Both the position numbers and the translations under genes were made by a program. A stretch of 64,000 nt of DNA, from positions 1 to 64,000 of IMG/VR virus record IMGVR_UViG_3300032050_000004. One strand, 5' to 3'. The first letter of the stretch is position 1. Every line of letters starts with the position of its first letter. The notes beneath the pieces are model-generated. The model ran no database searches and was not told where the DNA came from. It worked only from the letters and a program-made list of their open reading frames with translations. This document shows positions 24,262-62,321 of the stretch, piece after piece.

Positions 24262-24699
24262 TTACAACCCATCAACAAAGTATTCAATTTCAAAATCAAT
24301 ACCCAAATGATCAAATTTACCGATTTCCTTATCATTGAGTATATCTTGCATTATATCATCAAAAAGACCTGTGTATTCTGAGTTTACCCTGTCTTTTTCC
24401 TGTTGCGTGGAGTTTGTTTTTTTAGGACCTTCAAGTTGTAATTTAAAGAAAACATTAATATTATTAGAAAAATGAACTTGAGTGGTGATGGACGTACCAA
24501 CACCATTTAGATATTCATTTACAAATCGGTCTTCAGATCTTTTTTTAACAATTCTATTAAATCCCTGCTTTAGTATCTCATCTCCGATTGATTTAGAAAT
24601 AGAAGCTGCTGCCATTTCCAAGTTCTCATTTTCGGAAAATGCATTTTCATTTAAATGTTTCCTGATGGTGTTTTTAATAAATTGTCTTAAATTTCTCAT
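24262..24699 (-). CDS. Tagged hypothetical protein (MRNLRQFIKNTIRKHLNE)
   Basis: Shared N-terminal tag; ATAAATA on + at 24704. Confidence 0.6.
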   Translation of the reverse strand: MRNLRQFIKNTIRKHLNENAFSENENLEMAAASISKSIGDEILKQGFNRIVKKRSEDRFVNEYLNGVGTSITTQVHFSNNINVFFKLQLEGPKKTNSTQQEKDRVNSEYTGLFDDIMQDILNDKEIGKFDHLGIDFEIEYFVDGL

Positions 24700-24755
24700 G
24701 GTTATAAATAGTAAGGAATTTGACAAAATAAAAAAACCCACGTTTTTGGCGTGGT

Positions 24756-25886
24756 TTAAACTTCTCCGTATTCTATATTGCCCAATCTATTTAGCCAACC
24801 TTTACCATGAACGGCAAAAGTATCAGAGGATTTATATCTGATGGCTCTTTGTTTTTTTATTTGTTTGAATAATTCTTCTTGGTTTTGTTTATTGGCTATT
24901 TTGATCCAGATAACAGAAAAGGGATCATCAGCCGAAGAAATATCAACCCCCATATTCATTAGGGCATTTCTAAGGGATTCTTTGGTTCCGGAAGAACCTT
25001 GGTTTACGCAACCATCATATAAAATATTAGCTATGGACTGATTTGAAAAATGATGAAGGTTGTTTTGATCCCAATAATCTTTCTTATAGATTTTCAATGC
25101 ACTGTCATAGGACAGGTTTCTCATATCTTCTGCTTTTGGCAATCTACCAAGGTATTTTGCTAAAATAGGAGCTGAGATACCATATTTGGTTCCGACAAAT
25201 CTTTTACCATAACCTTTAATATTGATCCAGTTTCCTTTATCTTTTCTATCACCTGAATAACCAGCTTCATATATTTTAACATGTTTTTGGGCTTCATTGA
25301 AAGAGGATCTTCTTGTAGATGTTGGTAAAATTCCACTTTTTTCTTTAGTATCTTGGGGTTCTTGTATTTGTTCTTGATCTTGGTTTTGGACAACTTGAAC
25401 AAATTCCTTTGCCATAACCGGATCAATTTTGTTTTGAGGAGATCCAACCAAAGTAGAAAGAGAAGCTACACCCAAAAACACTGCAGCAGTAGAGATTATA
25501 ATTTTCCTTCTAATTTCTTTAGGAAGGTTTTTAATCTTCTCTAAGAACTTATAAAAATACTCTTGGACTTTTTCTTTAGGTAGTTTATCAACGAAGGATT
25601 TAATTTTCTTTGCTAGTTCGTCTGCAAAAGTTTCTTTTGAGGATGCTCCGGACAAATCCCATTGAAAAGTCAAAGGTAATTCATCTGGAGTGCCCTTTTT
25701 AATTTCTGGATCCCATTCATAGGTATTTGGACTTGTCCATTTACCATTTTCTTTAAGGAGGGAATATAAACCGTCAAATATCTGGTTAAATTCTCTTTCC
25801 AGCATTAAACTCTGAAAATCCTTATCCATAGAGATTATATTTTCTCTGATAAGGGATCTTAGTTTATATTCAGAATTTTTTTTCAT
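24756..25886 (-). CDS. Glycoside hydrolase family 108 lysozyme with tagged N-terminal extension and one TM helix
   Basis: EAGYSGDRKDKG, GTKYGIS, IYKKDYWD, LYDGCVNQG, C-terminal GKGWLNRL; likely start is MKKNSEYKLRSLIRE. Confidence 0.85.
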   Translation of the reverse strand: MKKNSEYKLRSLIRENIISMDKDFQSLMLEREFNQIFDGLYSLLKENGKWTSPNTYEWDPEIKKGTPDELPLTFQWDLSGASSKETFADELAKKIKSFVDKLPKEKVQEYFYKFLEKIKNLPKEIRRKIIISTAAVFLGVASLSTLVGSPQNKIDPVMAKEFVQVVQNQDQEQIQEPQDTKEKSGILPTSTRRSSFNEAQKHVKIYEAGYSGDRKDKGNWINIKGYGKRFVGTKYGISAPILAKYLGRLPKAEDMRNLSYDSALKIYKKDYWDQNNLHHFSNQSIANILYDGCVNQGSSGTKESLRNALMNMGVDISSADDPFSVIWIKIANKQNQEELFKQIKKQRAIRYKSSDTFAVHGKGWLNRLGNIEYGEV

Positions 25887-26017
25887 AGTCTCAAATAAAT
25901 AGGATAAAAAACCTTTAAAAAAAAACAAATTTTCATAGAAAAAAAACACAAGATACAATAAAAAAAATTATATTTATTATATAGACAAAACAATTTTCCA
26001 AACACTATAATTTAAAA

Positions 26018-27442: not shown

Positions 27443-27455
27443 AAAAAACAAAAAA

Positions 27456-30467: not shown

Positions 30468-31031
30468 TTAAGATTCATTACTAAACCTTAGCATACCTTC
30501 ATCGTCAATATAAAGATCTACTTCTTTTAAGTTATGAGCTGCAGTCATTAATTGATTTTCATTTTCGTAGGTATAGTCAAAAAAACCTGAACCGTGTCTA
30601 TTTCTGGTAAGCCAAATATCATGTCCCAGACGTTCTAAACCATTTTCATTCACAGCTTCATTTACAGCTTCAATTCCTGCTAATTTTATAAACTTTTTAA
30701 TATCAAGATAAGCTTGAATCAAAGAGTCTGTGGTAATATAATCTTTACTAAAAGAATCAACTCCTTTGGATTTAAGTTCTTTTTGCATTCTGATGATTTT
30801 ATCTATTTCGCTTTCATCTTCATCATCGTCGTCATCATCGTCAAAATCATAATCTTTTTCTGAATTCCCTGTATCTTTTAAATTTTCTTCTTCTGTCCAA
30901 AGTGCAGCTTCTAAATAGCCGTTCATAATTTGTTTTATTTCAGATTCGGTCAAATCATTCATATCTTCATTTTCTTTAAGGATACCGGCAAGAACTTGCA
31001 TTCTTTTTATTTCATTGATAAGATTGCTCAT
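30468..31031 (-). CDS. Tagged protein (EIKRMQVLAGI) with GHDIWLTRNRHGSGFFD domain
   Basis: Shared tag, acidic linker, and a conserved phage motif GHD.WLTRN.HG.GF. Confidence 0.65.
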   Translation of the reverse strand: MSNLINEIKRMQVLAGILKENEDMNDLTESEIKQIMNGYLEAALWTEEENLKDTGNSEKDYDFDDDDDDDEDESEIDKIIRMQKELKSKGVDSFSKDYITTDSLIQAYLDIKKFIKLAGIEAVNEAVNENGLERLGHDIWLTRNRHGSGFFDYTYENENQLMTAAHNLKEVDLYIDDEGMLRFSNES

Positions 31032-31836: not shown

Positions 31837-32682
31837 ATGAAAAATAAAAACTTATTGTCTGAAATACATAGAATGAAAGAATTGGCTGGGATTATTTCAG
31901 AGTCCAGTATGTTAAATGAGGATTATTTGGAATTAAAGTCCATAGCAAAACAACTATATACTTTATTAAAAAGTAAAGGATATGATGTTCGCTTAGTTGA
32001 GAACAGCAGTAAAAGTAAATATGCTGGTGGCACAACTTTGGCTGGACAAAAGTATCTAAACAACAAAGGTGGCAGTGTGGAGATACATCAATTTTCCGAT
32101 GTTGAACAAATTGGTGTTTTTGTACCTGCTTATACCATAATGTATCAATTTATAAAAAATCCAGCAAACCATAAATATGTAGAATCCGTAATAGCAAAAA
32201 ATCGTCCGGATCTTGTGGGAAAAAACATAGGACTAGATGATACTGAAAAACATTGGACTCATATAAAAAATTTCATGTACGGAAAATCTGGAAAAATTGC
32301 TGAAATTTCAGATTTCATGAAAGATCAAGGAATAAGACAAACCATAGGTGCTTTAGGTAAGGAATTACAAAATGCAATTAAGTCAAAATACCCAACTATG
32401 TTATTCAGTTTTGAAGACGATGCAACTGGGTATTCAATGTATTTTGCTGAACCAAAAACAGCTAAGGGTGGTATTAAAAATCCAAATCAGCGTCCTAATG
32501 CACCGAAGCCTGAGGGCAATGACCAACAAAAAATGGCAGCTGAAGATTCTCAGATAAATGAAAGAGGTTTGGCTTTTAACCAAAAGACTTTGACTCCTAG
32601 GACTGACGGAAGTGATTTACCATATCATGCACCAGTAACAACAAACAAACCTCATCCAAATAGAAAAAATAGATTCAAATGA
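31837..32682 (+). CDS. Tagged hypothetical protein (MKNKNLLSEIHRMKELAGIISE)
   Basis: Tag; TATTTAT at 31809. Confidence 0.65.
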   Translation: MKNKNLLSEIHRMKELAGIISESSMLNEDYLELKSIAKQLYTLLKSKGYDVRLVENSSKSKYAGGTTLAGQKYLNNKGGSVEIHQFSDVEQIGVFVPAYTIMYQFIKNPANHKYVESVIAKNRPDLVGKNIGLDDTEKHWTHIKNFMYGKSGKIAEISDFMKDQGIRQTIGALGKELQNAIKSKYPTMLFSFEDDATGYSMYFAEPKTAKGGIKNPNQRPNAPKPEGNDQQKMAAEDSQINERGLAFNQKTLTPRTDGSDLPYHAPVTTNKPHPNRKNRFK

Positions 32683-33089
32683 AAAATAAAAATTTATTAA
32701 GCGAAATACGCAGGATGCAAGAACTTGCCGGAATAATTACTGAGGGTAATGTAAATGAAAATTGGTATAGTGTAAAAAAATGGGATGATGCAGGTCAAAA
32801 GTATGTTAGTCATTTAGGTGGAAATATTGATGGCTTGAAAGAACAGCCCAAGTTCAAAGTAAAAGATGTTGTAAAAATCAAAGCATATCAAAAAGAGTAT
32901 ATGGCTCAAATCATAGGAATTTTTGCGAATTATGATACTCAGGAAATATTATATGGAGTGAGGATTTTTTCAGATCCTACAATTCCAACAAGTAGTACAT
33001 CGCTTGATAAAATCGAAGAAGTTGATATAATTGAAAAATTGTCTGAGATACCAGATAATATAAAAAACAATCCAAAATTCGAGAAATAG
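32679..33089 (+). CDS. Tagged hypothetical protein (MKNKNLLSEIRRMQELAGIITE)
   Basis: First 22 aa nearly identical to the upstream gene, remainder unrelated; start overlaps the upstream stop. Confidence 0.65.
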   Translation: MKNKNLLSEIRRMQELAGIITEGNVNENWYSVKKWDDAGQKYVSHLGGNIDGLKEQPKFKVKDVVKIKAYQKEYMAQIIGIFANYDTQEILYGVRIFSDPTIPTSSTSLDKIEEVDIIEKLSEIPDNIKNNPKFEK

Positions 33090-34432: not shown

Positions 34433-34858
34433 ATGTCAAATAAAATTACATTAAGCGAATTAAGAAAACTTATAAAACAAGTAATAAATGAAGGTCCATA
34501 TGATGATATAGATTTCGGTTTTTTAGATCAAGAAGATCAAGAAAAAAATGCTTTGAGGATTCAGGCATCTGAAGAATTTTATAATAAAATGGTTAAGGAT
34601 TTAGATATTTTGAAAGAAATATATCGTTTGTTCACTTCTTCTAATGGTGAAGAAAATGCATTTTCAAAGTTTAAAGATTCACAATACTATAGCAGGGTTG
34701 AACATTATATGGAAGATTTATATAAAAATGTTGAATACAGAAAAAAATTTGGAGATGGGCAGTTATTAAAAATATGTGAATCAACTTTTGAAAAATTCTT
34801 TAGTGCTGCTTATGAAGCTGCCAAAAAGAGACACGAAAGAAAACAAAGTGAATTATAA
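34433..34858 (+). CDS. Tagged hypothetical protein (ELRKLIKQVINE)
   Basis: Tag; TATTTAT at 34409. Confidence 0.6.
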   Translation: MSNKITLSELRKLIKQVINEGPYDDIDFGFLDQEDQEKNALRIQASEEFYNKMVKDLDILKEIYRLFTSSNGEENAFSKFKDSQYYSRVEHYMEDLYKNVEYRKKFGDGQLLKICESTFEKFFSAAYEAAKKRHERKQSEL

Positions 34859-34888: not shown

Positions 34889-35740
34889 TTAAGATCCAGA
34901 AACCCAAAAATCTATTTTAGATACTTTTTCACCTGTTGTTTTTTCAAACCATCTTTTTACTACTTCTTTAATATCTTTATCGCTCATGGTAAAATTCATT
35001 TTGACAAGTCTAAAAAGAGTGTCATCAGCATATAAATAATTATTTTCCTTTTTTATACCCAGAACTTCAGATTCTACTTCGAGGTCAAAAACAAATTCGT
35101 CATTCTTATCGAAGTATTGTATTCCGTAAACTTTTTTACCCAATTTATCAACTGCATATGATTTGGATTTTAGTTCACCCAAGTCAAAATCTAAGAAATC
35201 ATAAACAAGATCTTCATCACTTTGTATTTCTAATTCTCCAGAAGAAATTCTATCTAAAACACTCTTTTCGTGAGGTTGCAGACTCTTTTCTCCATATTTT
35301 GCCACCTTGTCTAATATATCATCAAGTAAATCATCTTGATAACCTTCGTTTATGGATTTTTGTTTTTTTAATCTCTCTGTTTTCTTTTTAGATTCTTCTT
35401 TTTTACTTTCTGCATATTCCAAAGCTCTTTTCAATCTACTTTTAGTTTCCGGATCTTTTGCGTTTTCAAAAGCAGCTCTTACTCTTTGGTGAATAAGATT
35501 TATTATTTGAGATTGTCTTTTGTGTGATTTGGACTTAAAACTAGGTTTATTAAGTGTATCGGCTATATCTTCTTTTGTTCTAAATTTTATTGAAACTGTA
35601 TCATTAGGATTTTCATCTGTATATAATCTTCTACCAGAACCTTTTGGTTTTTTGCCTGTACCTACTTCAGGATCAGATTCATTTAATTCAAATGATTCTT
35701 TAATAATTTGTCGTATATATTCTCTTAAATTTGACTCCAT
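34889..35740 (-). CDS. Tagged hypothetical protein (LREYIRQIIKES)
   Basis: Tag; conserved phage motif PEVGTGKKPKGSGRRLYTDENP.DTVSIKF. Confidence 0.65.
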   Translation of the reverse strand: MESNLREYIRQIIKESFELNESDPEVGTGKKPKGSGRRLYTDENPNDTVSIKFRTKEDIADTLNKPSFKSKSHKRQSQIINLIHQRVRAAFENAKDPETKSRLKRALEYAESKKEESKKKTERLKKQKSINEGYQDDLLDDILDKVAKYGEKSLQPHEKSVLDRISSGELEIQSDEDLVYDFLDFDLGELKSKSYAVDKLGKKVYGIQYFDKNDEFVFDLEVESEVLGIKKENNYLYADDTLFRLVKMNFTMSDKDIKEVVKRWFEKTTGEKVSKIDFWVSGS

Positions 35741-35780: not shown

Positions 35781-37703
35781 ATGAATTTACGTTTAGAAAT
35801 AAGAGAGATAATAAAATCCATTTTAAATGAGGGAAAAAACCCATTTGAAGTAATGGATTATTATTTAAAAAATGAACCTGCTCTTATAAAAAAACTTACC
35901 ACAAAAGACAATGCTTTATTAAAGAGATTAGCTTATTTGGATATTGAATACAATCCGGAAAAATTAGAAGTTGGTAAAATATTTCCTTGGATATTAAACT
36001 TATGGAAAAAGGGCGATCCTGTTATTTTAAATTTAATATCTGGTACTCCAGATGCCAATTTACTTAACAAGTTTAAATCCTCTCAGGAATTATTTAATAA
36101 AGGTTCTTTTAAAAAATCTATAGGTGTTACTGATATTCAAAAATTCAAGAATGTAAATGATTTTATAGAAAAGGTAAGTGCAGCATTTATTGAACCTACT
36201 GAACTACCGGCTTTTGCAAATTTTAATGCTGATGAGATTAATAAAGATATTAAGGAAGGTATAATTGCAAGAACTAATTTATCTAATGACAATTTCTTTA
36301 TCATAACTCCATTAAAGAAAAAAGGAGCTTGTAAATATGGAAATGTTCATAATAAAGAAAATCAATGGTGTACTTCTAAGGTTGAAAACAACGCTTTTGA
36401 TTCTTACAAAGATGGTATTCTTTATATTTTTATGGATAAAAAAGATAATCTTAAATCTAAGTATCAGTTATTTTACAAAGAGGGAAGATTTCAATTCATG
36501 GATGAATTTAACAGACCTTTTAATTATGAAGGGTTTTTTGATGAAAACATAGATGTTTTTCAAAAGTTGTTTCCAAGCGTAGTAAAAAATTTAGAAAACA
36601 AAGAAGAAGGAGATCCAAAACTATTTAGTCAAATTATTAATTATTTTCCAAGATATTATAAAGAAATTTATTTTACGAATATAGAGAAATTTTCAAAAGG
36701 ATTATTAGCAGATTTAATTCAAATAAATCAAGGTAAAATAAATCCTGAAGAATTCTTCTCAAGTGAAAAAGTTGAGGAAATAGCGGGATTTGAATATGAT
36801 GATTTTACAGTATACAAAGATAGAATTGTTTTTGATTGTAGTTTAGATTCTATTAATGATGTATTACCAAATTATTTTTGGGCTTATAAAAATGGATATC
36901 AGTACTATGAATTTAATTCGGAAGAATTTGATTATATGTACAATTACATAAAAGAAGAAGATAAACCCAAATGGATAAGTGTCATAAAAATTTTTGATAA
37001 AGATTTTAAAGATGATGAATTCAACGATGATGGGACACTATATAGATCAATTACTGACGGGGTTACTGAAAAATACTTTGATAAACTTTTATACAATTTT
37101 TCTGGAGCATATGAAGAGGCAGTAAATAACGCACAATCAACATGGATTGATGGGGTTATGGATAAATGTCCTTTTGGAATTAGAAATGATTCGATAACTT
37201 TTGAATATAAAAAAGTAGCAGAATATTGTTTGCAAAGTAGCTATCTAAATCCAGAAAAATTTTTTGATATTATAGAGCGATGGATGGACAAAGAAGGAAT
37301 AACTGATGATAATTATTATGATTATTTTAATAATCAAATAGATTATAGTGAGGCAGAAAAAGCACTATCAGATGGTATAGATGAAATTATTGAAAATATA
37401 AAAGACGATGAAGAGCTTCAAGGAAGTTTAATAAACAAGGAAAAATTGGATAAGTTTATTAAAGATCTTAAATTTATAAAAGGATACAATGAATATTATT
37501 TAGATACAGAATTTGCTAGGATTAAAATTAAAAAAATAGATTTAGAAAATGACAGAATATTTATTCAATATTTTGAATTAAAAAATGATAAAAAACATGA
37601 AGGTTGGATAGGTATAGATGATTTACCTAGATATTCTACAACTCCAATGTTATTTGAAATTAAAAAAATAAGAGAAATTATAAGAGAATTATTAAATAAA
37701 TAA
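35781..37703 (+). CDS. Large tagged protein with tag-like helices at both ends
   Basis: N-terminal LRLEIREIIKSILNE; C-terminal EIKKIREIIRELLNK; internal ACKYG...QWCTS...KYQL...QFMD block. Confidence 0.65.
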   Translation: MNLRLEIREIIKSILNEGKNPFEVMDYYLKNEPALIKKLTTKDNALLKRLAYLDIEYNPEKLEVGKIFPWILNLWKKGDPVILNLISGTPDANLLNKFKSSQELFNKGSFKKSIGVTDIQKFKNVNDFIEKVSAAFIEPTELPAFANFNADEINKDIKEGIIARTNLSNDNFFIITPLKKKGACKYGNVHNKENQWCTSKVENNAFDSYKDGILYIFMDKKDNLKSKYQLFYKEGRFQFMDEFNRPFNYEGFFDENIDVFQKLFPSVVKNLENKEEGDPKLFSQIINYFPRYYKEIYFTNIEKFSKGLLADLIQINQGKINPEEFFSSEKVEEIAGFEYDDFTVYKDRIVFDCSLDSINDVLPNYFWAYKNGYQYYEFNSEEFDYMYNYIKEEDKPKWISVIKIFDKDFKDDEFNDDGTLYRSITDGVTEKYFDKLLYNFSGAYEEAVNNAQSTWIDGVMDKCPFGIRNDSITFEYKKVAEYCLQSSYLNPEKFFDIIERWMDKEGITDDNYYDYFNNQIDYSEAEKALSDGIDEIIENIKDDEELQGSLINKEKLDKFIKDLKFIKGYNEYYLDTEFARIKIKKIDLENDRIFIQYFELKNDKKHEGWIGIDDLPRYSTTPMLFEIKKIREIIRELLNK

Positions 37704-38188: not shown

Positions 38189-38476
38189 ATGAATAAAATA
38201 GAATTAGAATATAAATTAAGAAATCAGATTAGGTCTATTTTAAGAGAATCTGTATCAGAAAATAGAGAAATTGCTTTAGGTCATGAAGAAATTGATGCTT
38301 TAGAAAAAACTCTAAAACCAGATGAGTATGTTTGGTTAGATGACAGAACCGGTAATTTAACTGGTGAAAAAGTAACAAAAAAAGAATATCTAAAAAGGAT
38401 GTTGAGACGTGCAGTAGATGATAAAAAGTGGGACAAAGTCCAATCTGCTATTTTATTTTTAGATACTCAAATTTAA
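38189..38476 (+). CDS. Tagged small protein (KLRNQIRSILRES)
   Basis: Tag; TATTTAT at 38167. Confidence 0.6.
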   Translation: MNKIELEYKLRNQIRSILRESVSENREIALGHEEIDALEKTLKPDEYVWLDDRTGNLTGEKVTKKEYLKRMLRRAVDDKKWDKVQSAILFLDTQI

Positions 38477-39534: not shown

Positions 39535-40104
39535 ATGAATTTATTGCGTAAAAAAATTAAGGAGATTATTCAGGAAATTTATTTGAATGAATTTACTGAC
39601 GATGAATATGCAACTATAAAATCCCAATATTCTGATAAAAGAATAATTTTAAGTCATGAAAATGAAATTGACTTTTATCCAAGAGATGAACATCAAAGAA
39701 TAACTTATAAACCCAAAGGTTTGTGGTATGGATTCGGAACTTCTTGGCTAGAGTGGGTCAGATCCGAAATGCCAGACTGGGAAAAAGATTATAAAAGTAT
39801 TTTCTTATTGGAAATTAATGAAAGTTCGGTTTTAAAATTAAGCAGTAAGGAAGAATTGATAGAATTTACTAAAAACTATTCTCCTTCACACAATTCAATA
39901 GGACCATCTTCAACATCTTATTCTGAAAGAAATTTGATTGATTGGTCAATGGTTGCAAATAAATATGCTGGCATAGAAATAAATCCTTATATCTATTCAG
40001 CAAGGATGGATGAATTTACAAATTGGTATTATCCATGGGACGTTGCTTCAGGATGTATTTGGAGAAAAAGTGGTATAAAATCAATTAATAAAATTGATTT
40101 ATAA
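39535..40104 (+). CDS. Tagged protein with conserved KP.GLWY / IDW..VA.KY.GIEI / WDVASGCIW domain
   Basis: Tag LRKKIKEIIQE; TATTTAT at 39524. Confidence 0.6.
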   Translation: MNLLRKKIKEIIQEIYLNEFTDDEYATIKSQYSDKRIILSHENEIDFYPRDEHQRITYKPKGLWYGFGTSWLEWVRSEMPDWEKDYKSIFLLEINESSVLKLSSKEELIEFTKNYSPSHNSIGPSSTSYSERNLIDWSMVANKYAGIEINPYIYSARMDEFTNWYYPWDVASGCIWRKSGIKSINKIDL

Positions 40105-42991: not shown

Positions 42992-43618
42992 TTAAGCAGA
43001 GTAGCCAAATTCCATAATACTATCTCCGTTACCGTAAATGTTTTTTGCTTTTACTTTTTTAGACAATATTTTAAAATTATTACCTAAATGTGCTTTTCCG
43101 TGATCGACAGCATATTGCCTTACAGTTGTAACCCAGTCTCCATCATTTATTACAGATAGTTTTTCATCTTGTTTTGGAGTTTCCTTGAGTCTTTTTAATT
43201 CATCATAAATGAAATCATAATATTGGGAAGAATTTTGCCAATTACCTACACCATTGGGTAACTTTCCATATTTAAGTATAAAAGCTTTATGTTTTTCTAA
43301 TTCATCTATTTTTTCCGATATTGTCAAAATTCTTGGAATAGATCTATAAATAGTAACAGTAGCATTGGGTTTATCTTTCAAAGATTGAATTATGCTTACT
43401 GCCAATTGATCGTTTGGATCTCCTGTACCAAAATATCTTGCTGCATTCGAAGTGTAAATATCTTCACCAAAAGAGTTGGTCATATTATAAATTGGACTGG
43501 AGTATGAATCGCTGGCATGTGGTGCCTGATGTTCTCCTCTATAATCAAAAGGTCCAAGATTACTATAAACTTCTTTTATAGTAGAACGTATTAAATTTAT
43601 TAATTTAATTTTAGACAT
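42992..43618 (-). CDS. Tagged protein with TIYR...GDWVT...YA domain (possible ART-like fold)
   Basis: Tag LINLIRSTIKE; VTIYRSIP, INDGDWVT..RQYA..HG, GDSIMEFGY. Confidence 0.5.
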   Translation of the reverse strand: MSKIKLINLIRSTIKEVYSNLGPFDYRGEHQAPHASDSYSSPIYNMTNSFGEDIYTSNAARYFGTGDPNDQLAVSIIQSLKDKPNATVTIYRSIPRILTISEKIDELEKHKAFILKYGKLPNGVGNWQNSSQYYDFIYDELKRLKETPKQDEKLSVINDGDWVTTVRQYAVDHGKAHLGNNFKILSKKVKAKNIYGNGDSIMEFGYSA

Positions 43619-49712: not shown

Positions 49713-50594
49713 ATGAAAAGAAAAATTTTAGAAGCCGTTATATCAAGTGCTAAATCAAAGCCCTTTTTGGAAGAATTGAGATTTTTTTTTGAGGACAATG
49801 ATAAAATTAGTTTTAATCAACTAGCTTCAATGGCAGCAAAATATGGTATTGAAGTGGTGAATTATGATACATTTTATGATGAGTTACCGGAATTGTGGAA
49901 AAAAGGTCAAATACCACATAAAGGTATAGAGATATTCGGACTAGCTAATCCAGTAACAAAGAGACCTAGATTGGTTGTTACAATTGACTCAATTAATAAA
50001 AAAAAATATAGTTTTATTTCAATAGTTGTAAGTCATGAATTTGTTCATGCTGGTCAAATGGATAGATTAAAACCGGGATTTATATATATTCCACCCAAAA
50101 CAGTTTATGATTTAAATGTTTACTATTCTGACAAACAAGAAATAATGGCATGGTCTAAAACAATAGTTGATGATTTGATTCAAACCTTCAAACCACAAAC
50201 TTTTGAGGAGGCTATGGAAAAATTACCTAAAGGACATTATTATAAAAAAATAAAAGAAGTTTTTAAGGATGATCCAAAGGTATGGAACAAATATTTAAAG
50301 AACATTTATAATTATTTAAGAATGGAATTCGAACCAGTAGAAGAAAAATCTGATTTAAGTGAATTAAGAAAAAAAATCAGAGAAATCCTTTCAGAGGATG
50401 AAAAAATGAAAATTAACTATGCTTATTTTCAACAATTACTTGACAAGAGTAGGACTGATTTAAAAAATAGAAATTATTTACAAGGAATTTTAAATTCAAT
50501 ACGTAAAGCTGGTGGTATGGGAACCAAAAGACAATATGCAGTATTGAAAAGGTTTGAAACTGGTGATACAACTCCTTATTCATCTAAAAATTAA
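49713..50594 (+). CDS. Zincin-like (HEFVH) protein with an internal tag and C-terminal module
   Basis: VVSHEFVHAGQ...QEIMAW; internal SELRKKIREILSE; TATTTAT at 49701. Confidence 0.6.
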   Translation: MKRKILEAVISSAKSKPFLEELRFFFEDNDKISFNQLASMAAKYGIEVVNYDTFYDELPELWKKGQIPHKGIEIFGLANPVTKRPRLVVTIDSINKKKYSFISIVVSHEFVHAGQMDRLKPGFIYIPPKTVYDLNVYYSDKQEIMAWSKTIVDDLIQTFKPQTFEEAMEKLPKGHYYKKIKEVFKDDPKVWNKYLKNIYNYLRMEFEPVEEKSDLSELRKKIREILSEDEKMKINYAYFQQLLDKSRTDLKNRNYLQGILNSIRKAGGMGTKRQYAVLKRFETGDTTPYSSKN

Positions 50595-51224: not shown

Positions 51225-51704
51225 ATGAAAAGTTTAAACAATACAATCAGAAAAATAATTAAGGAAACTATAGATACTGCAGGTAATTTTGAAACTAAAA
51301 TTACTAAAGGTGTTTATATCCGTGGTTTAGAGAAATTTTTTGATATTGAAAAGAGTGATCTGGATTATGATTGCGACTTTTCAATACTTTGGAGTTTGGA
51401 TATTGAATCTAGGTCTTGGGGTTTAAAATCAATTATACCAAATGTTTCAAGTATAAGAGGTACTATTAAATGGAGAGTAATAAAAGATCTTTTAGAGAAA
51501 GAAGTTTACGATTTTATTAAAAGTAAAAGCAATTATGAGGATGAAGATTATTTGGAGGGTGAAATGGAATTTAACTCACTAAATAAATTCGAAGGAAAAG
51601 AATGGATAATTTTAGATGAAGATTTTAAAATTAAAGATAGTGGTGAGCTTTTTCCTTCAGAAATAGATATAGATTTCTATAAAATGGAAATAACCATCTC
51701 TTGA
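51225..51704 (+). CDS. Tagged hypothetical protein (LNNTIRKIIKET)
   Basis: Tag at the likely start; W.LDIE.RSWGLK motif. Confidence 0.6.
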   Translation: MKSLNNTIRKIIKETIDTAGNFETKITKGVYIRGLEKFFDIEKSDLDYDCDFSILWSLDIESRSWGLKSIIPNVSSIRGTIKWRVIKDLLEKEVYDFIKSKSNYEDEDYLEGEMEFNSLNKFEGKEWIILDEDFKIKDSGELFPSEIDIDFYKMEITIS

Positions 51705-52849: not shown

Positions 52850-54373
52850 ATGTATTCAAAAAATCAAATAAAAAAATTAATTAAGGAACAAGTCAAATTC
52901 ATATTTGAAAATGATTTGCTTTTGGAGGCTGATTATAAAAGAAAAATATTAAGTAAATTTACAATACCAGAATCTACAGCTGAATATGTATCCGAAAGAT
53001 TAGGTAAATTATCATTATGGTTTTTAAATGCTTTAGAAAAAGAAGTATTTGACTCTAAGGAGGATTTTATAAAATATATAAATGAAAGACCTTTTTGGAT
53101 TAGATCTAATTATGATAATACTATAATAAAAATTTTAGATTGGCTTAGACACCCTTTAATTGCTGGTACGGTTGATTTGAAGAATTTGACATTACAACAA
53201 GCTATAGAAAATTCAGAAAAATTTCATGATGAATTAAAGACTTTAGGTGGTGAAATAGATTATAAAGAAGAGAATAAAAAATTAGTTCAGTATGATAATA
53301 AGTTTTATTGGGCTGAAATACCCGGAAATTATTCTGATGAAGAATGCAAAAGAATGGGTCACTGCGGAAGAACATCAAGAGGAGATATGTTATTTTCTTT
53401 AAGATCTGACATACCTTATGGAAAAGGACACACATTAAATGATTCACATTTGACTGTTGCGTATAATTCAACAGATGGAATAATTTATCAAAGTAAGGGA
53501 AAGAAAAATGCTAAACCATCTCAAAAATATTTTCCTTATTTTTTCGATTTGATTATGAGGTTGCCAGAATTTAACGGTTTTGGAAGAGAGTATGCAAGTT
53601 CTGAAGATATAAATTTTGATGATTTCTCAAATGATCAATTAATAAAATTGTACAACAAATTTCCCAAAGCATTCAGTACCTATAAGTCACAAAAAATTTT
53701 ATTTGATAGGGGAATAATTAAAGAAATTACAGCTAAGAGTAAAATAATTTTAGATCTTGATGTGGATGATATTGATAGTTATATTCAAACTGGAAGAGAT
53801 TTAAGGAATGATATAATAAAATTAATACTTCAAGATCCTTATGATTTATATGATCCTTATTATGAACACTCTAATTGGAAGTATTCTATTGATTATGTCG
53901 ATGAAAAAAATAAAAAAACAATATTAGAATACATTGAAAAGAAATTCCCTAATATAGATATAAGTTCAAATGATATTGAAGAAATAATAAAAGAAAATGA
54001 GGATGAGCTTGATGATATAATTAGAGCAATCAATAGAGCCTCTGGAGATTGTGAATCATCAGACTATCAAAATTATTGTTATAAACAATTGAAGAATACT
54101 TTAGAATTTTGGGGTAATGTAGAGGAACTAGATGATACTGGTGCTAAAATTGAAGTTGATATTGAACAAATTCTTGATAATGTTGATGCAGAATATGTTT
54201 CTGATGCTATGGAAAGATGTGATGATGACAGAGAATGTGCTTTTCACGAATTAGTTTCAAATGGAGATATAGATAAACCTAGATTTTATTTAGATGATAG
54301 ATATACACCATCTTGTAATAGAGAAGATTTTAATTCTTATCTAGTAGATTCATTAGATTTTGAACTTTCATAA
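52850..54373 (+). CDS. Large tagged protein with a PcfJ-like domain
   Basis: Tag IKKLIKEQV; EECKRMGHCGR...LFSLR...HLTV; acidic C-terminal half; TATTTAT at 52821. Confidence 0.55.
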   Translation: MYSKNQIKKLIKEQVKFIFENDLLLEADYKRKILSKFTIPESTAEYVSERLGKLSLWFLNALEKEVFDSKEDFIKYINERPFWIRSNYDNTIIKILDWLRHPLIAGTVDLKNLTLQQAIENSEKFHDELKTLGGEIDYKEENKKLVQYDNKFYWAEIPGNYSDEECKRMGHCGRTSRGDMLFSLRSDIPYGKGHTLNDSHLTVAYNSTDGIIYQSKGKKNAKPSQKYFPYFFDLIMRLPEFNGFGREYASSEDINFDDFSNDQLIKLYNKFPKAFSTYKSQKILFDRGIIKEITAKSKIILDLDVDDIDSYIQTGRDLRNDIIKLILQDPYDLYDPYYEHSNWKYSIDYVDEKNKKTILEYIEKKFPNIDISSNDIEEIIKENEDELDDIIRAINRASGDCESSDYQNYCYKQLKNTLEFWGNVEELDDTGAKIEVDIEQILDNVDAEYVSDAMERCDDDRECAFHELVSNGDIDKPRFYLDDRYTPSCNREDFNSYLVDSLDFELS

Positions 54374-54470: not shown

Positions 54471-55340
54471 TTAATTACCACCCATGGTAACACTAAAACC
54501 AGATTTAGTCATCGTTTCTTCACCACCTGCTTTATCAACTATTTTTATAGTTTCTTCAAAAGAACCTGAACTTTGTGCTTTTGAATAAGTGGCAGAAACA
54601 ACACTCCTGCCCTTTTCCAATAGATCTTGCCATACATTAAAAACACTTTCCTTGTATTCTGGACCTGCTTCTGAATCTATAACAGTTCTTGTGTTTGCAT
54701 GTATGTTTTGAGCTTTTTGTAAAGCTGTTTGAACAACATCTTGAACATCATTACCAAAACCATTCATAGTTGTTGTGTGACCATCTCTCAAATCAACTAA
54801 TATTTTAATTGCTTTCATTCTTTGCATATCATCACTAGTATTGACCCATATTTTTTTTGTATCTTCTAATATTCCGATAGCAATGTTTAATTCATGTTTC
54901 GGTATTGGGGTTCCGGTTGCTGCTGCTTTAGCAACTGTGCAAAATACTATCAATAAAACAAAAACTATAATTGTTATAATTATCAACTTGAAAAGTAAAG
55001 GATATTTATTTGAGAAATTCTTTAATAACTTTACTGCTGCACCTATTGTCCAACTTATGAATTGTTTTACTTTTGAAAGTATACTAAATCCAACAGAATA
55101 AGCTTGTAATAAAAAAGTGTTAAGATAATTAGCTATCTTATCTACAAAATTTGTTTTTAAATCTGTAAATATGTTTTCACTAATTAATTCAGAATCCAAT
55201 ATTTCATAAAATTCTTTTTCAGTAATTTTGTTTTCACAAAATAAATTTACAGACTTAACAGGAACAAAATTTTCATTATTTAACCTAATTCCAGCTAATT
55301 CTTGCATTCTGCGTATTTCTTTCAATAAAACCTTATCCAT
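54471..55340 (-). CDS. Tagged protein (EIRRMQELAGI) with a central TM segment
   Basis: Tag; hydrophobic LIIITIIVFVLLIVF; ATAAATA on + at 55345. Confidence 0.6.
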   Translation of the reverse strand: MDKVLLKEIRRMQELAGIRLNNENFVPVKSVNLFCENKITEKEFYEILDSELISENIFTDLKTNFVDKIANYLNTFLLQAYSVGFSILSKVKQFISWTIGAAVKLLKNFSNKYPLLFKLIIITIIVFVLLIVFCTVAKAAATGTPIPKHELNIAIGILEDTKKIWVNTSDDMQRMKAIKILVDLRDGHTTTMNGFGNDVQDVVQTALQKAQNIHANTRTVIDSEAGPEYKESVFNVWQDLLEKGRSVVSATYSKAQSSGSFEETIKIVDKAGGEETMTKSGFSVTMGGN

Positions 55341-55403: not shown

Positions 55404-55892
55404 ATGGATTTAAGAAAAATTGTTAGACAAATAATTAAAGAAGAGGCTGAATCCCAAGAATTACAAACAGATTTTGGGGATAAAGACAAAGCTAGAAGAG
55501 CTCTAATAGCTCTTTCAAAGGGTTTGATACCTGATCAAGAAATAAAAGTACAAGGAAGCTTAAGTCCTGAATATCCTGATGAATCAGGTCATTACAGTGA
55601 AGATGGAGAAGTTGAGATTGAATATAGTTTTGAGGGTTCTAAATATTTATTAATATTATCAATAACTGGAGATTACTATTATAAAGAGGGTTTTGGAGGT
55701 GATTATTGGCAACCACCTGATGAAGGTGAATGGTCTGACGAAGACATTACATTAAATGATGATGAATTTAGTGTAGGAGATCAAGACGATAACGAATATA
55801 ATTTCAATGTAGATGAATTGGGGTCAACATTTAAGAGGGATATGGAGAAATTTCTTTTAGGATTTTACGACGCAATGGATTCTTCACTATAG
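55404..55892 (+). CDS. Tagged acidic protein (MDLRKIVRQIIKEE)
   Basis: Tag; TATTTAT at 55378. Confidence 0.6.
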   Translation: MDLRKIVRQIIKEEAESQELQTDFGDKDKARRALIALSKGLIPDQEIKVQGSLSPEYPDESGHYSEDGEVEIEYSFEGSKYLLILSITGDYYYKEGFGGDYWQPPDEGEWSDEDITLNDDEFSVGDQDDNEYNFNVDELGSTFKRDMEKFLLGFYDAMDSSL

Positions 55893-57830: not shown

Positions 57831-58616
57831 TTAAGCAATGTATTGATTCAATTCATATCTACCAGATTCCATTCTATAAATCTGAATATGCAATTTTTTT
57901 CTAGATGGTTTACCATCTTTTTCTAAATCAAAACTCGCTTTTTTTGTATCTCCGTAATTTATTCCACCAATGCCAAAAAGAAAAAATTCTCTTTCTTGAT
58001 CGACGATCTCAAATCCCTTTTTAGTCGTTTTTTCAAGAACACTATCTAGTGCTTGAGCTAAACTTTCAAAATAAATCTCTTCAGATTTAATTTCTTTGAA
58101 CAATGCTTGACCTTGAGTGGCAGCAGCTTGAGCACCAGATGCTGCAGCAGCTGGATCAGCCAAATTAGGTTTGAAAATATAAGCCTTGAATTTGTCGTTT
58201 CTTTTTTGAACTTGCTTAGATTGAGGATCTGTGATTTGATAAGCTAATTGAAAATCTTTTATTTCACCGTCTTTAGGTCCAACTAATTTGCTACCAGCTA
58301 CAAATTTTTGTATATCTCCGGCAAAAACCGGATTAACTAAAATATTAAAACCACCAACTGGATTTCCATTATAAAACATTATTACATTTTTTGCTTTTGG
58401 ATTTGATGCCATGGCAAATTTTGCAAGGTTAGTAGTTGCATCATTAAGGTTTTTAGAGATAGCTATTTTATATCCTAATGTTTTAAAATATTTCTGTATT
58501 GCTGGAAATGTTTGCGTATCGAACTTCTGTTTAAATGCAGCAGCATCGACTTCTTGTAAAATTCCAGCCAATTCTTGTAATTTTTTCTTAAAATTTTCAG
58601 TTAATTTCATTTTCAT
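57831..58616 (-). CDS. Tagged hypothetical protein (KKLQELAGILQE)
   Basis: Tag; Ala-rich linker followed by a second FKE-like site; ATAAATA on + at 58631. Confidence 0.6.
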   Translation of the reverse strand: MKMKLTENFKKKLQELAGILQEVDAAAFKQKFDTQTFPAIQKYFKTLGYKIAISKNLNDATTNLAKFAMASNPKAKNVIMFYNGNPVGGFNILVNPVFAGDIQKFVAGSKLVGPKDGEIKDFQLAYQITDPQSKQVQKRNDKFKAYIFKPNLADPAAAASGAQAAATQGQALFKEIKSEEIYFESLAQALDSVLEKTTKKGFEIVDQEREFFLFGIGGINYGDTKKASFDLEKDGKPSRKKLHIQIYRMESGRYELNQYIA

Positions 58617-58675: not shown

Positions 58676-58957
58676 TCAAACATATTGATTGTCTCCGAAA
58701 TAGGTATCTAAGAATGTCTGGTATTCCATAATTTTTAGATTGGGATATTTAGATAATTCCCTTTTTGATATGGATGGATTTTCTCCTAAAACCAAACAAT
58801 CAATTCTTTCATCTAATGTATTAAATATCCTACCACCAAAAGCAAATATATATGGTGTCATTTTGCTTAGTAGAGGATTTTTAATCTTTCCATCAAAATG
58901 AATTCTAAGATCCTTTAGACCATCTGTAGAATGAGTTTTTACTTTTTTCTTGGACAT
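58676..58957 (-). CDS. Small BRCT-like protein
   Basis: IHFDGKI...FGGRI...IDCLVLGENP..SK...L.I; likely start is MSKKK. Confidence 0.55.
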   Translation of the reverse strand: MSKKKVKTHSTDGLKDLRIHFDGKIKNPLLSKMTPYIFAFGGRIFNTLDERIDCLVLGENPSISKRELSKYPNLKIMEYQTFLDTYFGDNQYV

Positions 58958-58958
58958 T

Positions 58959-60077: not shown

Positions 60078-60115
60078 TTTGTCTATTTGTTTTTGGATTT
60101 GTTTTTTCTGTTTTT

Positions 60116-61009: not shown

Positions 61010-61013
61010 GGTT

Positions 61014-61499
61014 TTATTTTGTTTGAGAATAGTATGGATTAACAATTGGATTCATACTTGCTTTATTATAAGAGATATTTGCAACTGATATTTCTTCAAT
61101 TTTAGTATAATCAAAATTAATGTTTTGATTTTTTATAAATTTTACAATGTGATAAAAATTGTGGTGATCTGAAGGCGTTTTGTCTTCAATAGATGTTATG
61201 TAAGGTATGTTAGAATTTGCTTCGGAAACGACTGGTACCATACCAACTAGTTCAATGTTTTCAAAATTTTTTGACTTATAAACAACATAATATCCAGAAA
61301 CAGTATCTCCTGAAATTTTCCAACTGATTAATAAATTATTTCCAATATCTGAAATTTTTGCACTTCTTACAAATGTTTGATTAGGATTTATTATGTGATA
61401 TTGATTCAATATAGACATTATACTGCCCTGATTGTATTGGGCAAATGAATTATAGAAACTACCTACTAATAATAAAAAAATTATAAATGTTTTTTTCAT
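61014..61499 (-). CDS. Secreted hypothetical protein
   Basis: Signal peptide MKKTFIIFLLLVGSFYNSFAQ; Ig-like strands. Confidence 0.55.
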   Translation of the reverse strand: MKKTFIIFLLLVGSFYNSFAQYNQGSIMSILNQYHIINPNQTFVRSAKISDIGNNLLISWKISGDTVSGYYVVYKSKNFENIELVGMVPVVSEANSNIPYITSIEDKTPSDHHNFYHIVKFIKNQNINFDYTKIEEISVANISYNKASMNPIVNPYYSQTK

Positions 61500-61595
61500 G
61501 ATTCAATTACTTATTTGTAAGGGCTAAATTAGTAATTTTTCACAATAGAGCCAAATATATTAAAAATGGGCTATTTATATTAAAGGTACAAAATT

Positions 61596-62321
61596 ATGAA
61601 CTTGAAAATAGTTGATATTTTAAGAGAAGGTTTAAAAGACAAAAATAATTCACAAGTTGCTGATTTTAAACCAGTTAAGTTGGGTTATAAATACGATGAA
61701 TTAAAAGAATTTATTGATAGTGAAACTATGGATATTCATTATAACAAACATTATAAAGGATATGTAAAAAAATTGAATGAGCTTTTGAAGGAAAAGGGTT
61801 TTAAATTAAAAAAGGATGATGGAATAATCAGTTTAATATCTAGGGTTAATGGCTTGGGGAAAAAAATAAAAAATCAAGCTGGTGGTGTATATAATCATGA
61901 ATTTCTTTGGGAAATCATGACCCCTGATAAAGAAAAGAGAATTTTTGATGGTGAGATTAAAAAAATTATAGAGAATCAATATGGATCATTAGAAAAGTTT
62001 ATAGAAGAATTCTCTAATGAGTCAAAAAGCAAATTTGGTTCTGGTTGGTGTTGGGCAATTTTGAAATCTAACAACAGAATAAAAATAATGACCACGTCCA
62101 ATCAGGATAATCCAAAAATGAATATTTTTCTAACTAAGGATAAAAACGAAGAAGGTAATATTATTTACAAACCAATAACAGGTAAAATAATTTTAGGTCT
62201 AGATCTTTGGGAACATTCATATTATCTTAAATACAGAAATAAACGAGATGACTATATTAAAAATTTTTGGAAAGTAGTTAATTGGAAATACATAAACGAT
62301 CTAATAAAAAAAGAGTCCTAA
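61596..62321 (+). CDS. sodA: Fe/Mn superoxide dismutase (Mn-type signature) with tag-like N-terminus
   Basis: ETMDIHYNKH, AGG..NH, FGSGW.W, NQD, DLWEHSYYLKY.N.R.DY. Confidence 0.92.
   Translation: MNLKIVDILREGLKDKNNSQVADFKPVKLGYKYDELKEFIDSETMDIHYNKHYKGYVKKLNELLKEKGFKLKKDDGIISLISRVNGLGKKIKNQAGGVYNHEFLWEIMTPDKEKRIFDGEIKKIIENQYGSLEKFIEEFSNESKSKFGSGWCWAILKSNNRIKIMTTSNQDNPKMNIFLTKDKNEEGNIIYKPITGKIILGLDLWEHSYYLKYRNKRDDYIKNFWKVVNWKYINDLIKKES

What the first reader, a model, noticed from the sequence alone, without database searches (positions are those of the whole stretch)
24262..62321. About 18 unrelated proteins share an N-terminal amphipathic tag ending at (I/L)xE: a modular capsid-cargo addressing system?
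Seen: LRxxIxxIIxE-type starts at 24699, 25886, 34433, 35740, 35781, 38189, 39535, 43618, 51225, 52850, 55404 and 61596, and an internal copy in 49713. EIxRMxELAGI-type starts occur at 31031, 31837, 32679, 55340 and 58616. What follows differs completely: GH108 lysozyme, SOD, zincin, PcfJ-like and possible ART-like domains. 31837 and 32679 share ~22 aa and then diverge. 35781 has a second tag at its C-terminus. Established: T4 internal proteins use a short N-terminal capsid-targeting peptide removed by gp21 at (I/L)-x-E. Inference: the phage grafts a portable tag onto diverse enzymes so they are packaged, matured and injected at infection. The two tag classes could dock on different scaffold sites.
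Basis: partly seen in the sequence, partly recalled or inferred. Interest (0 to 1): 0.8.

Follow-up and report, generated by a model that had tools for sequence, protein, structure and literature searches.

The report
Capsid-loading leader peptides on phage proteins
A very large uncultured phage puts one of two short leader peptides in front of at least 17 unrelated late proteins. The leaders look like T4-style "pack me into the head, then cut me off" tags, and one of them copies the tail end of the phage's own scaffold protein.

Summary
In window 24-62 kb, 17 genes start with one of two leaders. Class A is [L][R]xxI[R/K]x[I][I/L]xE (12 genes, two of them weak). Class B is EIxRMxELAGI[I/L]xE (5 genes). 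There is also one internal and one C-terminal class A copy. The protein bodies are unrelated, and the leaders are conserved at the protein level, not the DNA level.

The same phage (overlaps 99.99% identical) encodes a T4 gp21-type prohead protease (Peptidase_S77) with its catalytic His and Ser, an acidic scaffold and a gp23-type capsid protein. The capsid propeptide ends in [L/I][I/V/L]xE, the same P4-P1 pattern that ends the leaders at residues 11-23.

15 of 17 tagged genes carry the TATTTAT motif that also precedes the head genes. None carries the early-gene motif.

New here: class B repeats the conserved C-terminal peptide of the scaffold (R[M/W]QxLA[G/N]I) in 12 of 12 related phages. A class B profile finds 518 protein clusters, almost all N-terminal, on at least 78 unrelated bodies. 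A DNA pattern for it has 0 hits in cellular genomes and 64 in viral contigs.

Best reading: T4-like capsid-targeting propeptides, greatly expanded. Packaging and cleavage remain untested.

The parts
24646..24699 (-). Class A leader, aa 1-18 of a 145-aa protein (MRNLRQFIKNTIRKHLNE)
   Evidence: Matrix score 21.2 bits. TATTTAT 4 nt upstream of the ATG.
25830..25886 (-). Weak class A-like leader, aa 1-19 of the 376-aa GH108 muramidase-like protein (..LRSLIRENIIS)
   Evidence: 10.1 bits, no Glu in register. GH108 domain at residues 204-297. TATTTAT 8 nt upstream.
34433..34492 (+). Class A leader, aa 1-20 of a 141-aa protein (..LRKLIKQVINE)
   Evidence: 23.0 bits. Late motif upstream.
35696..35740 (-). 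Class A leader, aa 1-15 of a 283-aa protein (MESNLREYIRQIIKE)
   Evidence: 27.0 bits. Late motif 4 nt upstream.
35781..35831 (+). Class A leader, aa 1-17 of the 640-aa protein (MNLRLEIREIIKSILNE)
   Evidence: 21.2 bits. Late motif upstream.
37656..37700 (+). C-terminal class A copy in the same 640-aa protein (..MLFE|IKKIREIIRELLNK*), preceded by an LxE site
   Evidence: 18.4 bits at aa 626-636.
38189..38248 (+). Class A leader, aa 1-20 of a 95-aa protein (..LRNQIRSILRE)
   Evidence: 28.6 bits.
39535..39576 (+). Class A leader, aa 1-14 of a 189-aa protein (MNLLRKKIKEIIQE). The body matches phrog_8582.
   Evidence: 23.3 bits. PHROG match.
43571..43618 (-). Class A leader, aa 1-16 of a 208-aa protein (..LINLIRSTIKE). 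The body matches phrog_2579 (ParB C-terminal-like).
   Evidence: 21.6 bits. PHROG match.
50364..50396 (+). Internal class A copy (LRKKIREILSE) at aa 218-228 of the 293-aa protein 49713-50594. That protein has an HExxH at residue 108. An in-frame Met lies at 50322.
   Evidence: 24.4 bits..
51225..51266 (+). Class A leader, aa 1-14 of a 159-aa protein (MKSLNNTIRKIIKE). It lies just after the stop of the upstream gene.
   Evidence: 24.6 bits. No promoter of its own; operon position.
52850..52888 (+). Class A leader, aa 1-13 of a 507-aa protein (MYSKNQIKKLIKE)
   Evidence: 17.5 bits.
55404..55442 (+). Class A leader, aa 1-13 of a 162-aa protein (MDLRKIVRQIIKE)
   Evidence: 25.1 bits.
61596..61628 (+). 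Short class A-like leader, aa 1-11 of the Fe/Mn superoxide dismutase (MNLKIVDILRE). The SOD domain starts near residue 24-27.
   Evidence: Leave-one-out score only 5.7 bits. The extension is conserved in 27 orthologues at 60-82% identity while the linker varies. It is absent from untagged SODs.
30972..31031 (-). Class B leader, aa 1-20 of a 187-aa protein (MSNLINEIKRMQVLAGILKE). The body matches phrog_1915.
31837..31902 (+). Class B leader, aa 1-22 of a 281-aa protein (MKNKNLLSEIHRMKELAGIISE)
32679..32744 (+). Class B leader, aa 1-22 of a 136-aa protein (MKNKNLLSEIRRMQELAGIITE). The body is unrelated to that of the upstream gene.
55272..55340 (-). Class B leader, aa 1-23 of a 289-aa protein (MDKVLLKEIRRMQELAGIRLNNE). 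It has no (I/L)xE in register.
58551..58616 (-). Class B leader, aa 1-22 of a 261-aa protein (MKMKLTENFKKKLQELAGILQE)

Best explanation
The two leaders are capsid-targeting propeptides of a T4-type head-assembly system.

Proposed mechanism:
1. The tagged genes are transcribed late, together with the head genes.
2. The leader brings the protein into the assembling prohead core.
3. The gp21-type (Peptidase_S77) prohead protease then cuts after the Glu of the terminal [I/L][I/L]xE at residue 11-23. This frees the mature protein inside the head.
4. The protein stays with the DNA and is probably delivered into the next host cell.

Class B works by scaffold mimicry. It repeats the conserved C-terminal peptide of the phage's own scaffold protein (R[M/W]QxLA[G/N]I). 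It should therefore occupy whatever site that peptide binds. By analogy with other scaffolds, that site is the inner face of the major capsid protein. Class A is an amphipathic helix that resembles the N-termini of small proteins encoded in the head gene cluster, so it probably uses a different contact.

Shown here: the leaders, their N-terminal position, the protease, scaffold and capsid genes, the shared site pattern, the shared promoter motif, the scaffold-tail identity, and the virus-only distribution.

Inferred: docking, cleavage, retention in the virion, and injection.
For: 1. Same phage. The window and the head module sit on contigs whose overlaps are 99.95-99.99% identical.

2. Head genes. 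The module holds Peptidase_S77 (E=7e-30) and a Gp23-type capsid protein. The protease matches T4 gp21 structure 5JBL (E=1e-18). It keeps His and Ser at the two positions where that chain has Ala and wild-type T4 has His and Ser.

3. Site pattern. The capsid propeptide ends in Q[L/I][I/V]xE in 11 relatives and in MLNE in this phage. T4 gp23 has FLTE at residue 65, and its propeptide is 65 residues long (PMC5694885). The leaders end in I[I/L]xE at residues 11-23. T4 ipII and ipIII start MKTYQEFIAE, ipI has ..ITE at residue 19, and gp24 starts MAKINELLRE. T4 capsid-targeting sequences are 10-20 residue propeptides that load proteins into the prohead, foreign ones included, and gp21 removes them (PMC5694885, PMC3012670).

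4. Regulation. TATTTAT lies within 60 nt upstream of 15 of 17 tagged genes, against 7 of 82 others (Fisher p=1.6e-9). The two exceptions sit in operon positions. No tagged gene has the early motif, which precedes 19 of the 46 genes at w<20000. The same TATTTAT motif precedes the protease, scaffold, small head-module protein and tail genes.

5. Scaffold tail. It reads ..RRMRMLAGIVKPINE* here..ERMKKLAGIVK* in Microcystis phage Mel-JY01..SRWQKLAGIIK* in Flavobacterium phage immuto, and the same motif in 9 of 9 further loci. Wherever that stretch was read (this phage, Mel-JY01, immuto and 8 of the 9 further loci), an (I/L)xE lies about 10-16 residues upstream. T4 gp22 has no such end.

6. Portability. 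The class B profile finds 518 clusters at E<=1e-3. Of the best 150, 141 are N-terminal and 138 of those 141 have Glu at P1. Their 105 bodies of 60 aa or more fall into 78 unrelated groups. Near-identical leaders sit on five unrelated bodies in close relatives.

7. Virus-only. There are 0 matches in 596 Gb of cellular genomes and 64 in IMG/VR. Of those 64 loci, 31 carry an immuto-like terminase, 29 a portal and 12 an S77 protease within the stretch fetched.

8. Cultured relative. Immuto (160 kb) carries both classes: gp083 and gp230 are class B; gp080, gp094 and gp168 are class A; and gp072, encoded in the head module, has a class A-like start.
Against: - No virion proteome, cleavage data or expression timing exists for this phage or its relatives in the sources I could search.
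- (I/L)xE is a common tripeptide. Its weight comes only from its fixed place at the end of the leader.
- Two leaders (55340, 25886) lack it in register.
- The leaders share no sequence similarity with T4's MKTYQEFIAE beyond the hydrophobic P7/P4/P3 and Glu P1 pattern.
- That the scaffold tail binds the capsid protein is an analogy, not a result.
- Leaders and scaffold tails do not co-vary. Some scaffolds have LANI while their phage's leaders keep LAGI.
- TATTTAT is an AT-rich word in a 29% GC genome. It precedes only 29 of 98 class B genes in other phages.
- A superoxide dismutase is an odd capsid passenger.
Confidence: 0.78

Rival explanations
1. The leaders are docking helices that place proteins in the virion or in an assembly intermediate (head, neck or tail), but they are not removed. 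The terminal (I/L)xE is incidental.
For: Late-promoter motif shared with both head and tail genes. Two leaders lack an in-register site. Leader-like starts occur on genes inside the tail/baseplate region: L035:2368 and L035:7972.
Against: Glu at the last leader position is almost invariant: 138 of 141 in the global set. The P4-P1 pattern equals the capsid propeptide boundary. An S77 protease is present. The scaffolds whose tail region was read have a site just before the same peptide.
Confidence: 0.1
2. The shared start is a by-product of cassette shuffling. A mobile module of late promoter plus first codons spreads by recombination and is kept for expression (translation start), with no role for the peptide itself.
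For: Promoter motif and leader travel together, 4-22 nt apart. Near-identical leaders sit on unrelated bodies. Other phages' contigs match only the leader-coding bases and then diverge.
Against: Conserved residues use many synonymous codons, so selection acts on the peptide. Copies also occur inside and at the C-terminus of proteins. The same peptide ends the scaffold protein. SOD orthologues keep the leader while the linker drifts.
Confidence: 0.05
3. The leaders address proteins to some other place in the infected cell, such as a membrane, a phage-made compartment or a secretion route, rather than to the capsid.
For: Class A is a strongly amphipathic basic helix. The genome also encodes proteins with Bacteroidota T9SS sorting domains and signal peptides.
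Against: Class B is not amphipathic and equals the scaffold tail. The T9SS and signal-peptide proteins of the window carry no leader. The leaders have no hydrophobic core typical of a signal peptide. Leader genes cluster near terminase, portal and protease genes in many relatives.
Confidence: 0.05

Closest known systems
T4 capsid targeting sequences (CTS) of internal proteins IPI/IPII/IPIII, Alt and gp24, removed by prohead protease gp21
   Same: A short N-terminal leader (10-20 aa) on otherwise unrelated proteins. It ends in (L/I)xE, with hydrophobic residues at P7, P4 and P3. The gene set around it is the same: S77 protease, gp22-like scaffold and gp23-like capsid protein with a propeptide. 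The tagged genes share a promoter-like motif with the head genes, which suggests late expression. The tagged genes also cluster in a variable region, as in the T-even internal-protein loci.
   Different: No sequence similarity to MKTYQEFIAE. There are two distinct leader classes. The number is far larger: at least 17 in 38 kb and at least 26 in the roughly 240 kb read, against a handful in T4. Copies also occur inside and at C-termini. Class B derives from the scaffold's C-terminal peptide, which T4 gp22 lacks. The replication genes are not T4-like: PolA plus Pol III alpha.
C-terminal shell-binding tails of scaffold proteins (herpesvirus scaffold/protease precursor, P22 gp8); from my own knowledge
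   Same: The scaffold ends in a short conserved peptide, with a maturation-protease site just upstream. Cleavage would release the scaffold from the shell.
   Different: Binding of this tail to the capsid protein is not shown. What is unusual here is that the same peptide is reused at the N-terminus of many non-scaffold proteins.
Encapsulin cargo-loading peptides; from my own knowledge
   Same: A short terminal peptide is enough to address diverse cargo to the interior of an HK97-fold shell. The logic is portable and modular.
   Different: Encapsulin peptides are mostly C-terminal, have other motifs and are not cleaved. No encapsulin shell is involved here. This is a working analogy only.
Propeptides of phiKZ / SPN3US-type giant phage head and ejection proteins
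   Same: Many inner-head proteins are processed by a gp21-related protease. Identical N-termini on diverged paralogues have been noted (PMC5694885).
   Different: Those sites are (S/A/G)xE and the propeptides are often longer than 100 residues. Here P3 is I or L and the leaders are 11-23 residues, as in T4.

Membership tests
T4-type capsid targeting sequence / gp21-processed propeptide | Short (10-20 aa) N-terminal leader shared by otherwise unrelated proteins | tested here: met
   17 genes. The leader ends at residue 11-23. Bodies are unrelated. Globally, 141 of 150 hits are N-terminal, on 78 body groups.
T4-type capsid targeting sequence / gp21-processed propeptide | Leader ends in an (L/I)-x-E protease site | tested here: met
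   15 of 17 in register. Glu at P1 in 138 of 141 global class B leaders. Exceptions: 55340 and 25886.
T4-type capsid targeting sequence / gp21-processed propeptide | Genome encodes a Peptidase_S77 (gp21) prohead protease with its catalytic residues | tested here: met
   L038:19500-20153. Pfam E=7e-30. PDB 5JBL E=1e-18, with His and Ser conserved.
T4-type capsid targeting sequence / gp21-processed propeptide | gp22-like scaffold core, and a gp23-like capsid protein whose propeptide ends in the same site type | tested here: met
   Acidic 503-aa scaffold directly upstream of the Gp23-family capsid protein. The boundary is [L/I][I/V/L]xE in 12 phages.
T4-type capsid targeting sequence / gp21-processed propeptide | Expressed late, together with the head genes | tested here: inconclusive
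   A shared TATTTAT motif links tagged genes to head and tail genes and separates them from the early-motif genes. Timing itself was not measured, and the run data were uninformative.
T4-type capsid targeting sequence / gp21-processed propeptide | Sequence similarity to the T4 CTS (MKTYQEFIAE) | tested here: not met
   Only the P7/P4/P3 hydrophobic and P1 Glu pattern is shared. These are analogous or very distant leaders, not the same sequence family.
T4-type capsid targeting sequence / gp21-processed propeptide | Leader is sufficient for packaging and is cleaved off in the prohead | not testable with these tools
   This needs virion proteomics and leader-reporter fusions.
Scaffold C-terminal shell-binding peptide | Conserved terminal peptide on the scaffold with a protease site upstream | tested here: met
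   The C-terminal peptide is present in 12 of 12 scaffolds; an upstream (I/L)xE was seen in the 11 where that stretch was read.
Scaffold C-terminal shell-binding peptide | The peptide binds the major capsid protein | not testable with these tools
   No multi-chain prediction or binding data were available.
Encapsulin cargo-loading peptide | C-terminal uncleaved peptide next to an encapsulin shell gene | tested here: not met
   The leaders are N-terminal and end in a protease site. The shell is a T4-type capsid.
phiKZ-type giant-phage propeptides | (S/A/G)-x-E cleavage motif, and propeptides often longer than 100 residues | tested here: not met
   P3 is I or L and the leaders are 11-23 residues. 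The motif definition is from PMC5694885.

The most novel reading that the evidence does not exclude
Class B is a transplanted copy of the scaffold's shell-binding tail. On this reading, an uncultured but widespread clade of T4-type phages (probably of Bacteroidota) loads cargo by scaffold mimicry. A universal 22-residue address would then sit on hundreds of unrelated, uncharacterised proteins that are delivered into the host with the DNA. That would be a large, easily searchable catalogue of candidate first-strike effectors. It would also be a ready-made packaging tag for engineering these phages.
Probability: 0.45. Interest if true: 0.8.

Novelty: new variant of a known kind. Interest (0 to 1): 0.66.

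Why it matters
Proteins that travel inside a phage head act before any phage gene is expressed. In T4 they include anti-restriction and host-modifying factors. A leader that can be recognised from sequence alone marks such proteins in metagenomes. The class B profile already pulls out 518 protein clusters, nearly all of unknown function.

The link between the leader and the scaffold's own tail gives a concrete, testable loading mechanism. It also suggests how such tags arise, namely by copying a scaffold end.

A cultured relative, Flavobacterium phage immuto, carries both classes. The predictions can therefore be tested directly, and the tag could be used to load chosen proteins into phage heads.

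Tried and rejected
- I first assumed the 209,832-bp JGI contig was a closed circle and mapped the leftward walk onto it. This was rejected. The leftward loci lie on a different 216,699-bp contig. They do not overlap the tail region that a circle would require.
- Megablast of 20 kb against 50,697 phage records found nothing.
- Pfam, PHROGs, NCBIfam and two language-model look-ups gave no function for most cargo. 'PcfJ' remains only a weak lead.
- tblastn with a 30-44 aa leader or scaffold tail finds only immuto, at E about 1-2. The query is too short for wider reach.
- RNA runs: the two holders are probably DNA, sparse, and kept as contigs. They give no transcript starts.
- No paper on Mel-JY01 is in the library. 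No paper holds the class B peptide strings.
I rebuilt the alignment without them.
- I looked for co-variation between scaffold tails and class B leaders. None was found, and there was little variation to work with.
- A global search for class A was not attempted, because an 11-residue motif of about 25 bits cannot reach significance in these databases.
Full report
**What is in the window**

The window has 29% GC.

Positions 1-20 kb hold small genes, mostly on the minus strand. Nineteen of the 46 genes there are preceded by AACCTTT-N(8-20)-GTAYTGA.

Positions 24-62 kb hold larger genes on both strands. Seventeen of them begin with one of two leaders. Class A has the core [L][R]xxI[R/K]x[I][I/L]xE. 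Class B reads xxEIxRMxELAGI[I/L]xE.

A matrix built from the class A cores scores members 17-29 bits. Nothing else in about 100 genes exceeds 11 bits. Leave-one-out scores are 11-26 for ten members. The SOD (61596) and GH108 (25886) leaders are weak by this measure. The internal copy in 49713 and the C-terminal copy in 35781-37703 are confirmed. A relaxed scan found no further members.

With the first 30 residues removed, the bodies show no similarity (best E=0.01). Conserved leader residues use several synonymous codons, so the peptide is what is conserved, not a DNA repeat. Class A cores are strongly amphipathic as helices and class B cores are not. Pfam confirms GH108 and Fe/Mn SOD bodies. 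Most other bodies have no assignable function.

**Which genome this is**

Window proteins lie on JGI contig Ga0315909_10000020 (209,832 bp) and on IMGVR_UViG_3300032050_000004 (222,069 bp). On the latter, the window is at about 574-64,573 on the plus strand. Overlaps between fetched loci and the window are 99.95-99.99% identical.

Walking rightward passes the following:
- thymidylate synthase, aaRS-like genes, lysis genes and an SNF2 helicase;
- a replication block (PolA, RecA-like, 5'-3' exonuclease, DnaB, RNR);
- very large tail proteins (1790-aa tape-measure-like, 2580 aa, 1739 aa), gp53- and gp51-like baseplate proteins, Pol III alpha and a collagen-like fibre;
- finally the head module.

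Leftward, at least 57 kb of small early-type genes continue onto a different 216,699-bp contig. The genome is therefore probably well over 400 kb, although closure was not shown.

T9SS sorting domains and the cultured relative's host point to Bacteroidota.

**The head module**

L038 carries, in order:
- a 141-aa protein starting MKISKSDLEQLIKEE;
- a 186-aa protein;
- a Peptidase_S77 protease (E=7e-30);
- a 503-aa very acidic scaffold;
- a Gp23-family capsid protein.

The protease matches T4 gp21 structure 5JBL (E=1e-18). It keeps His (ELDHP) and Ser (GISSRG) at the positions where that chain has Ala and wild-type T4 has His and Ser. It finds 2,600 T4-type phage records, the best being Microcystis phage Mel-JY01 at 50.6% identity.

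The capsid propeptide ends in MLNE here and in Q[L/I][I/V]xE in eleven relatives. T4 gp23 has FLTE at residue 65, and its propeptide is 65 residues long (PMC5694885).

The leaders end in I[I/L]xE at residues 11-23. This matches T4 ipII/ipIII MKTYQEFIAE, ipI ..ITE and gp24 MAKINELLRE in length and in the P7/P4/P3/P1 pattern. T4 capsid-targeting sequences are 10-20 residue propeptides that load proteins, foreign ones included, into the prohead, and gp21 removes them (PMC5694885, PMC3012670).

**Regulation**

TATTTAT, usually (C)TATTTAT(T/A), lies 4-22 nt before the start codon of 15 of 17 tagged genes, against 7 of 82 others (p=1.6e-9). The two exceptions sit directly behind another gene. The same motif precedes the protease, the scaffold, the 141-aa protein, the fibre genes and the large tail genes. 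No tagged gene has the early motif.

Tagged genes found outside the window behave alike. One of them is set against the grain inside the early region, at L012:15583-16242. Counting those, I saw at least 26 leaders in about 240 kb, of which 17 lie in the 38-kb stretch of the finding.

**The scaffold link**

The scaffold ends ..EERRRMRMLAGIVKPINE*, which is the class B core. Mel-JY01's scaffold ends ..ERMKKLAGIVK* and immuto's ends ..SRWQKLAGIIK*. In nine of nine IMG/VR loci where a scaffold ORF precedes the capsid gene, it ends ..[S/A/N]R[M/W]Q[M/K/V]LA[G/N]I... T4 gp22 does not end this way.

Wherever the stretch before the tail was read (this phage, Mel-JY01, immuto and eight of the nine further loci), an (I/L)xE lies about 10-16 residues upstream of that tail. 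The protease could therefore detach the tail. The C-terminal class A copy in the 640-aa protein is likewise preceded by LFE.

Each of those loci also has one to three N-terminal class B leaders.

I infer that class B cargo binds where the scaffold tail binds. This is an analogy with other scaffold systems and is not demonstrated.

**Breadth**

- A 32-position profile of class B leaders finds 518 cluster representatives among 1.84 billion (E<=1e-3).
- Of the best 150, 141 carry the leader at the N-terminus. The logo is M-K-x-Q-[I/L]-N-E-I-K-R-M-Q-Q-L-A-G-[I/L/V]-[I/L]-x-E-[S/N]-Q-L-N-E, and Glu is at P1 in 138 of 141.
- A second [L/I/M]xE follows within nine residues in 63 of them. Their bodies form 78 unrelated groups.
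- A few proteins carry two copies, or internal or C-terminal ones.
- A degenerate DNA pattern for EIKRMQQLAGI has no match in 596 Gb of bacterial and archaeal genomes. It has 64 matches in IMG/VR. Many of those matches lie beside immuto-like terminase, portal and S77 protease genes.
- Flavobacterium phage immuto (160 kb, cultured) carries two class B leaders, three clear class A leaders, and a class A-like start on gp072 in the head module. A published comparison places it in a group with a divergent PolA plus a regular polymerase of family A, B or C (PMC11348598). This fits the PolA and Pol III alpha seen here.
- SOD orthologues at 60-82% identity keep MxLKIVDL[IV]KE while the linker drifts. 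Some SODs start directly at the domain. A further group has a different extension that also holds IxE sites.
- No paper in the library contains the class B strings.

**Verdict**

It is a variant of a known kind and not a new principle. What is new is the scale, the two classes, the origin of one class in the scaffold tail, and the wide virus-only spread of an apparently undescribed leader.

Packaging, cleavage and delivery remain to be shown, and a cultured relative makes that feasible.

Noticed in passing
window 1-19000 (for example upstream of 1135, 3113, 4363, 6125, 7503, 11546, 13731, 17246, 18017, 18775): A second, very regular promoter-like element, TTAAACCTTTT-N(12-15)-CGTATTGAT(TAAAAAA), precedes 19 of 46 small genes. 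It continues leftward over at least 57 kb of small genes. It is probably the early promoter of this phage.
   Followed up: partly
whole window; loci L008-L038: The window's contig is 222 kb. The early region runs on into a different 217-kb contig from the same sample set, and a relative has a 385-kb contig. The phage is probably larger than 400 kb, but I did not show closure.
   Followed up: partly
window 40106-42514 (-), 45774-46895 (+), 26018-27893 (+), 28611-29582 (-): Host-like genes sit on the phage: an M12B metalloprotease with PKD repeats and a T9SS sorting tail, an OmpA-family protein, a PAS histidine kinase with a response regulator, and a glycosyltransferase. None carries a leader. 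They point to a Bacteroidota host.
   Followed up: partly
window 58959-60077 (-) and 60116-61009 (-): Two adjacent proteins consist largely of KKPAKKVAKK-type lysine-rich repeats (histone H1-like). An Hc1-family protein lies in the tail region (L035:5849-6034).
   Followed up: no
window 50300-50396: The internal leader of 49713-50594 is preceded by an in-frame Met at 50322 and by ACATTTATAAT, which is close to the late motif. A nested 90-aa tagged product from an internal start is possible.
   Followed up: partly
proteins P0012-P0015, P0019, P0021, P0037, P0053; L114:348-1076: Some metagenomic proteins carry two class B copies (N-terminal plus internal or C-terminal, or in tandem), or only a C-terminal copy on a non-scaffold protein. 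They may be precursors that are cut into two cargo pieces.
   Followed up: no
proteins P0209, P0212, P0221, P0224, P0227, P0230: A second tier of SODs (about 50% identity) has a different extension of about 35 aa (..INLIE..IISEIKKIS..) that also contains IxE sites. This may be another leader type in another phage group.
   Followed up: no
T4 loci L060 and L062: T4's own CTS (MKTYQEFIAE|A) resembles the N-terminus of its scaffold gp22 (MLKEQLIAE|AQ). Scaffold-end mimicry may be a general origin of such tags.
   Followed up: no
window 21958-24177 (+); 38654-39484 (+); 52403-52804 (-): A 739-aa protein with a GIY-YIG domain, a truncated class II aaRS-like protein (further aaRS-like genes lie outside the window), and a SET-domain protein.
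   Followed up: no
L016:3374-5644: A stretch of about 2.3 kb without called genes lies between a 355-aa gene and a 177-aa gene in the lysis/helicase region. I did not examine it (tRNA genes or another RNA are possible).
   Followed up: no
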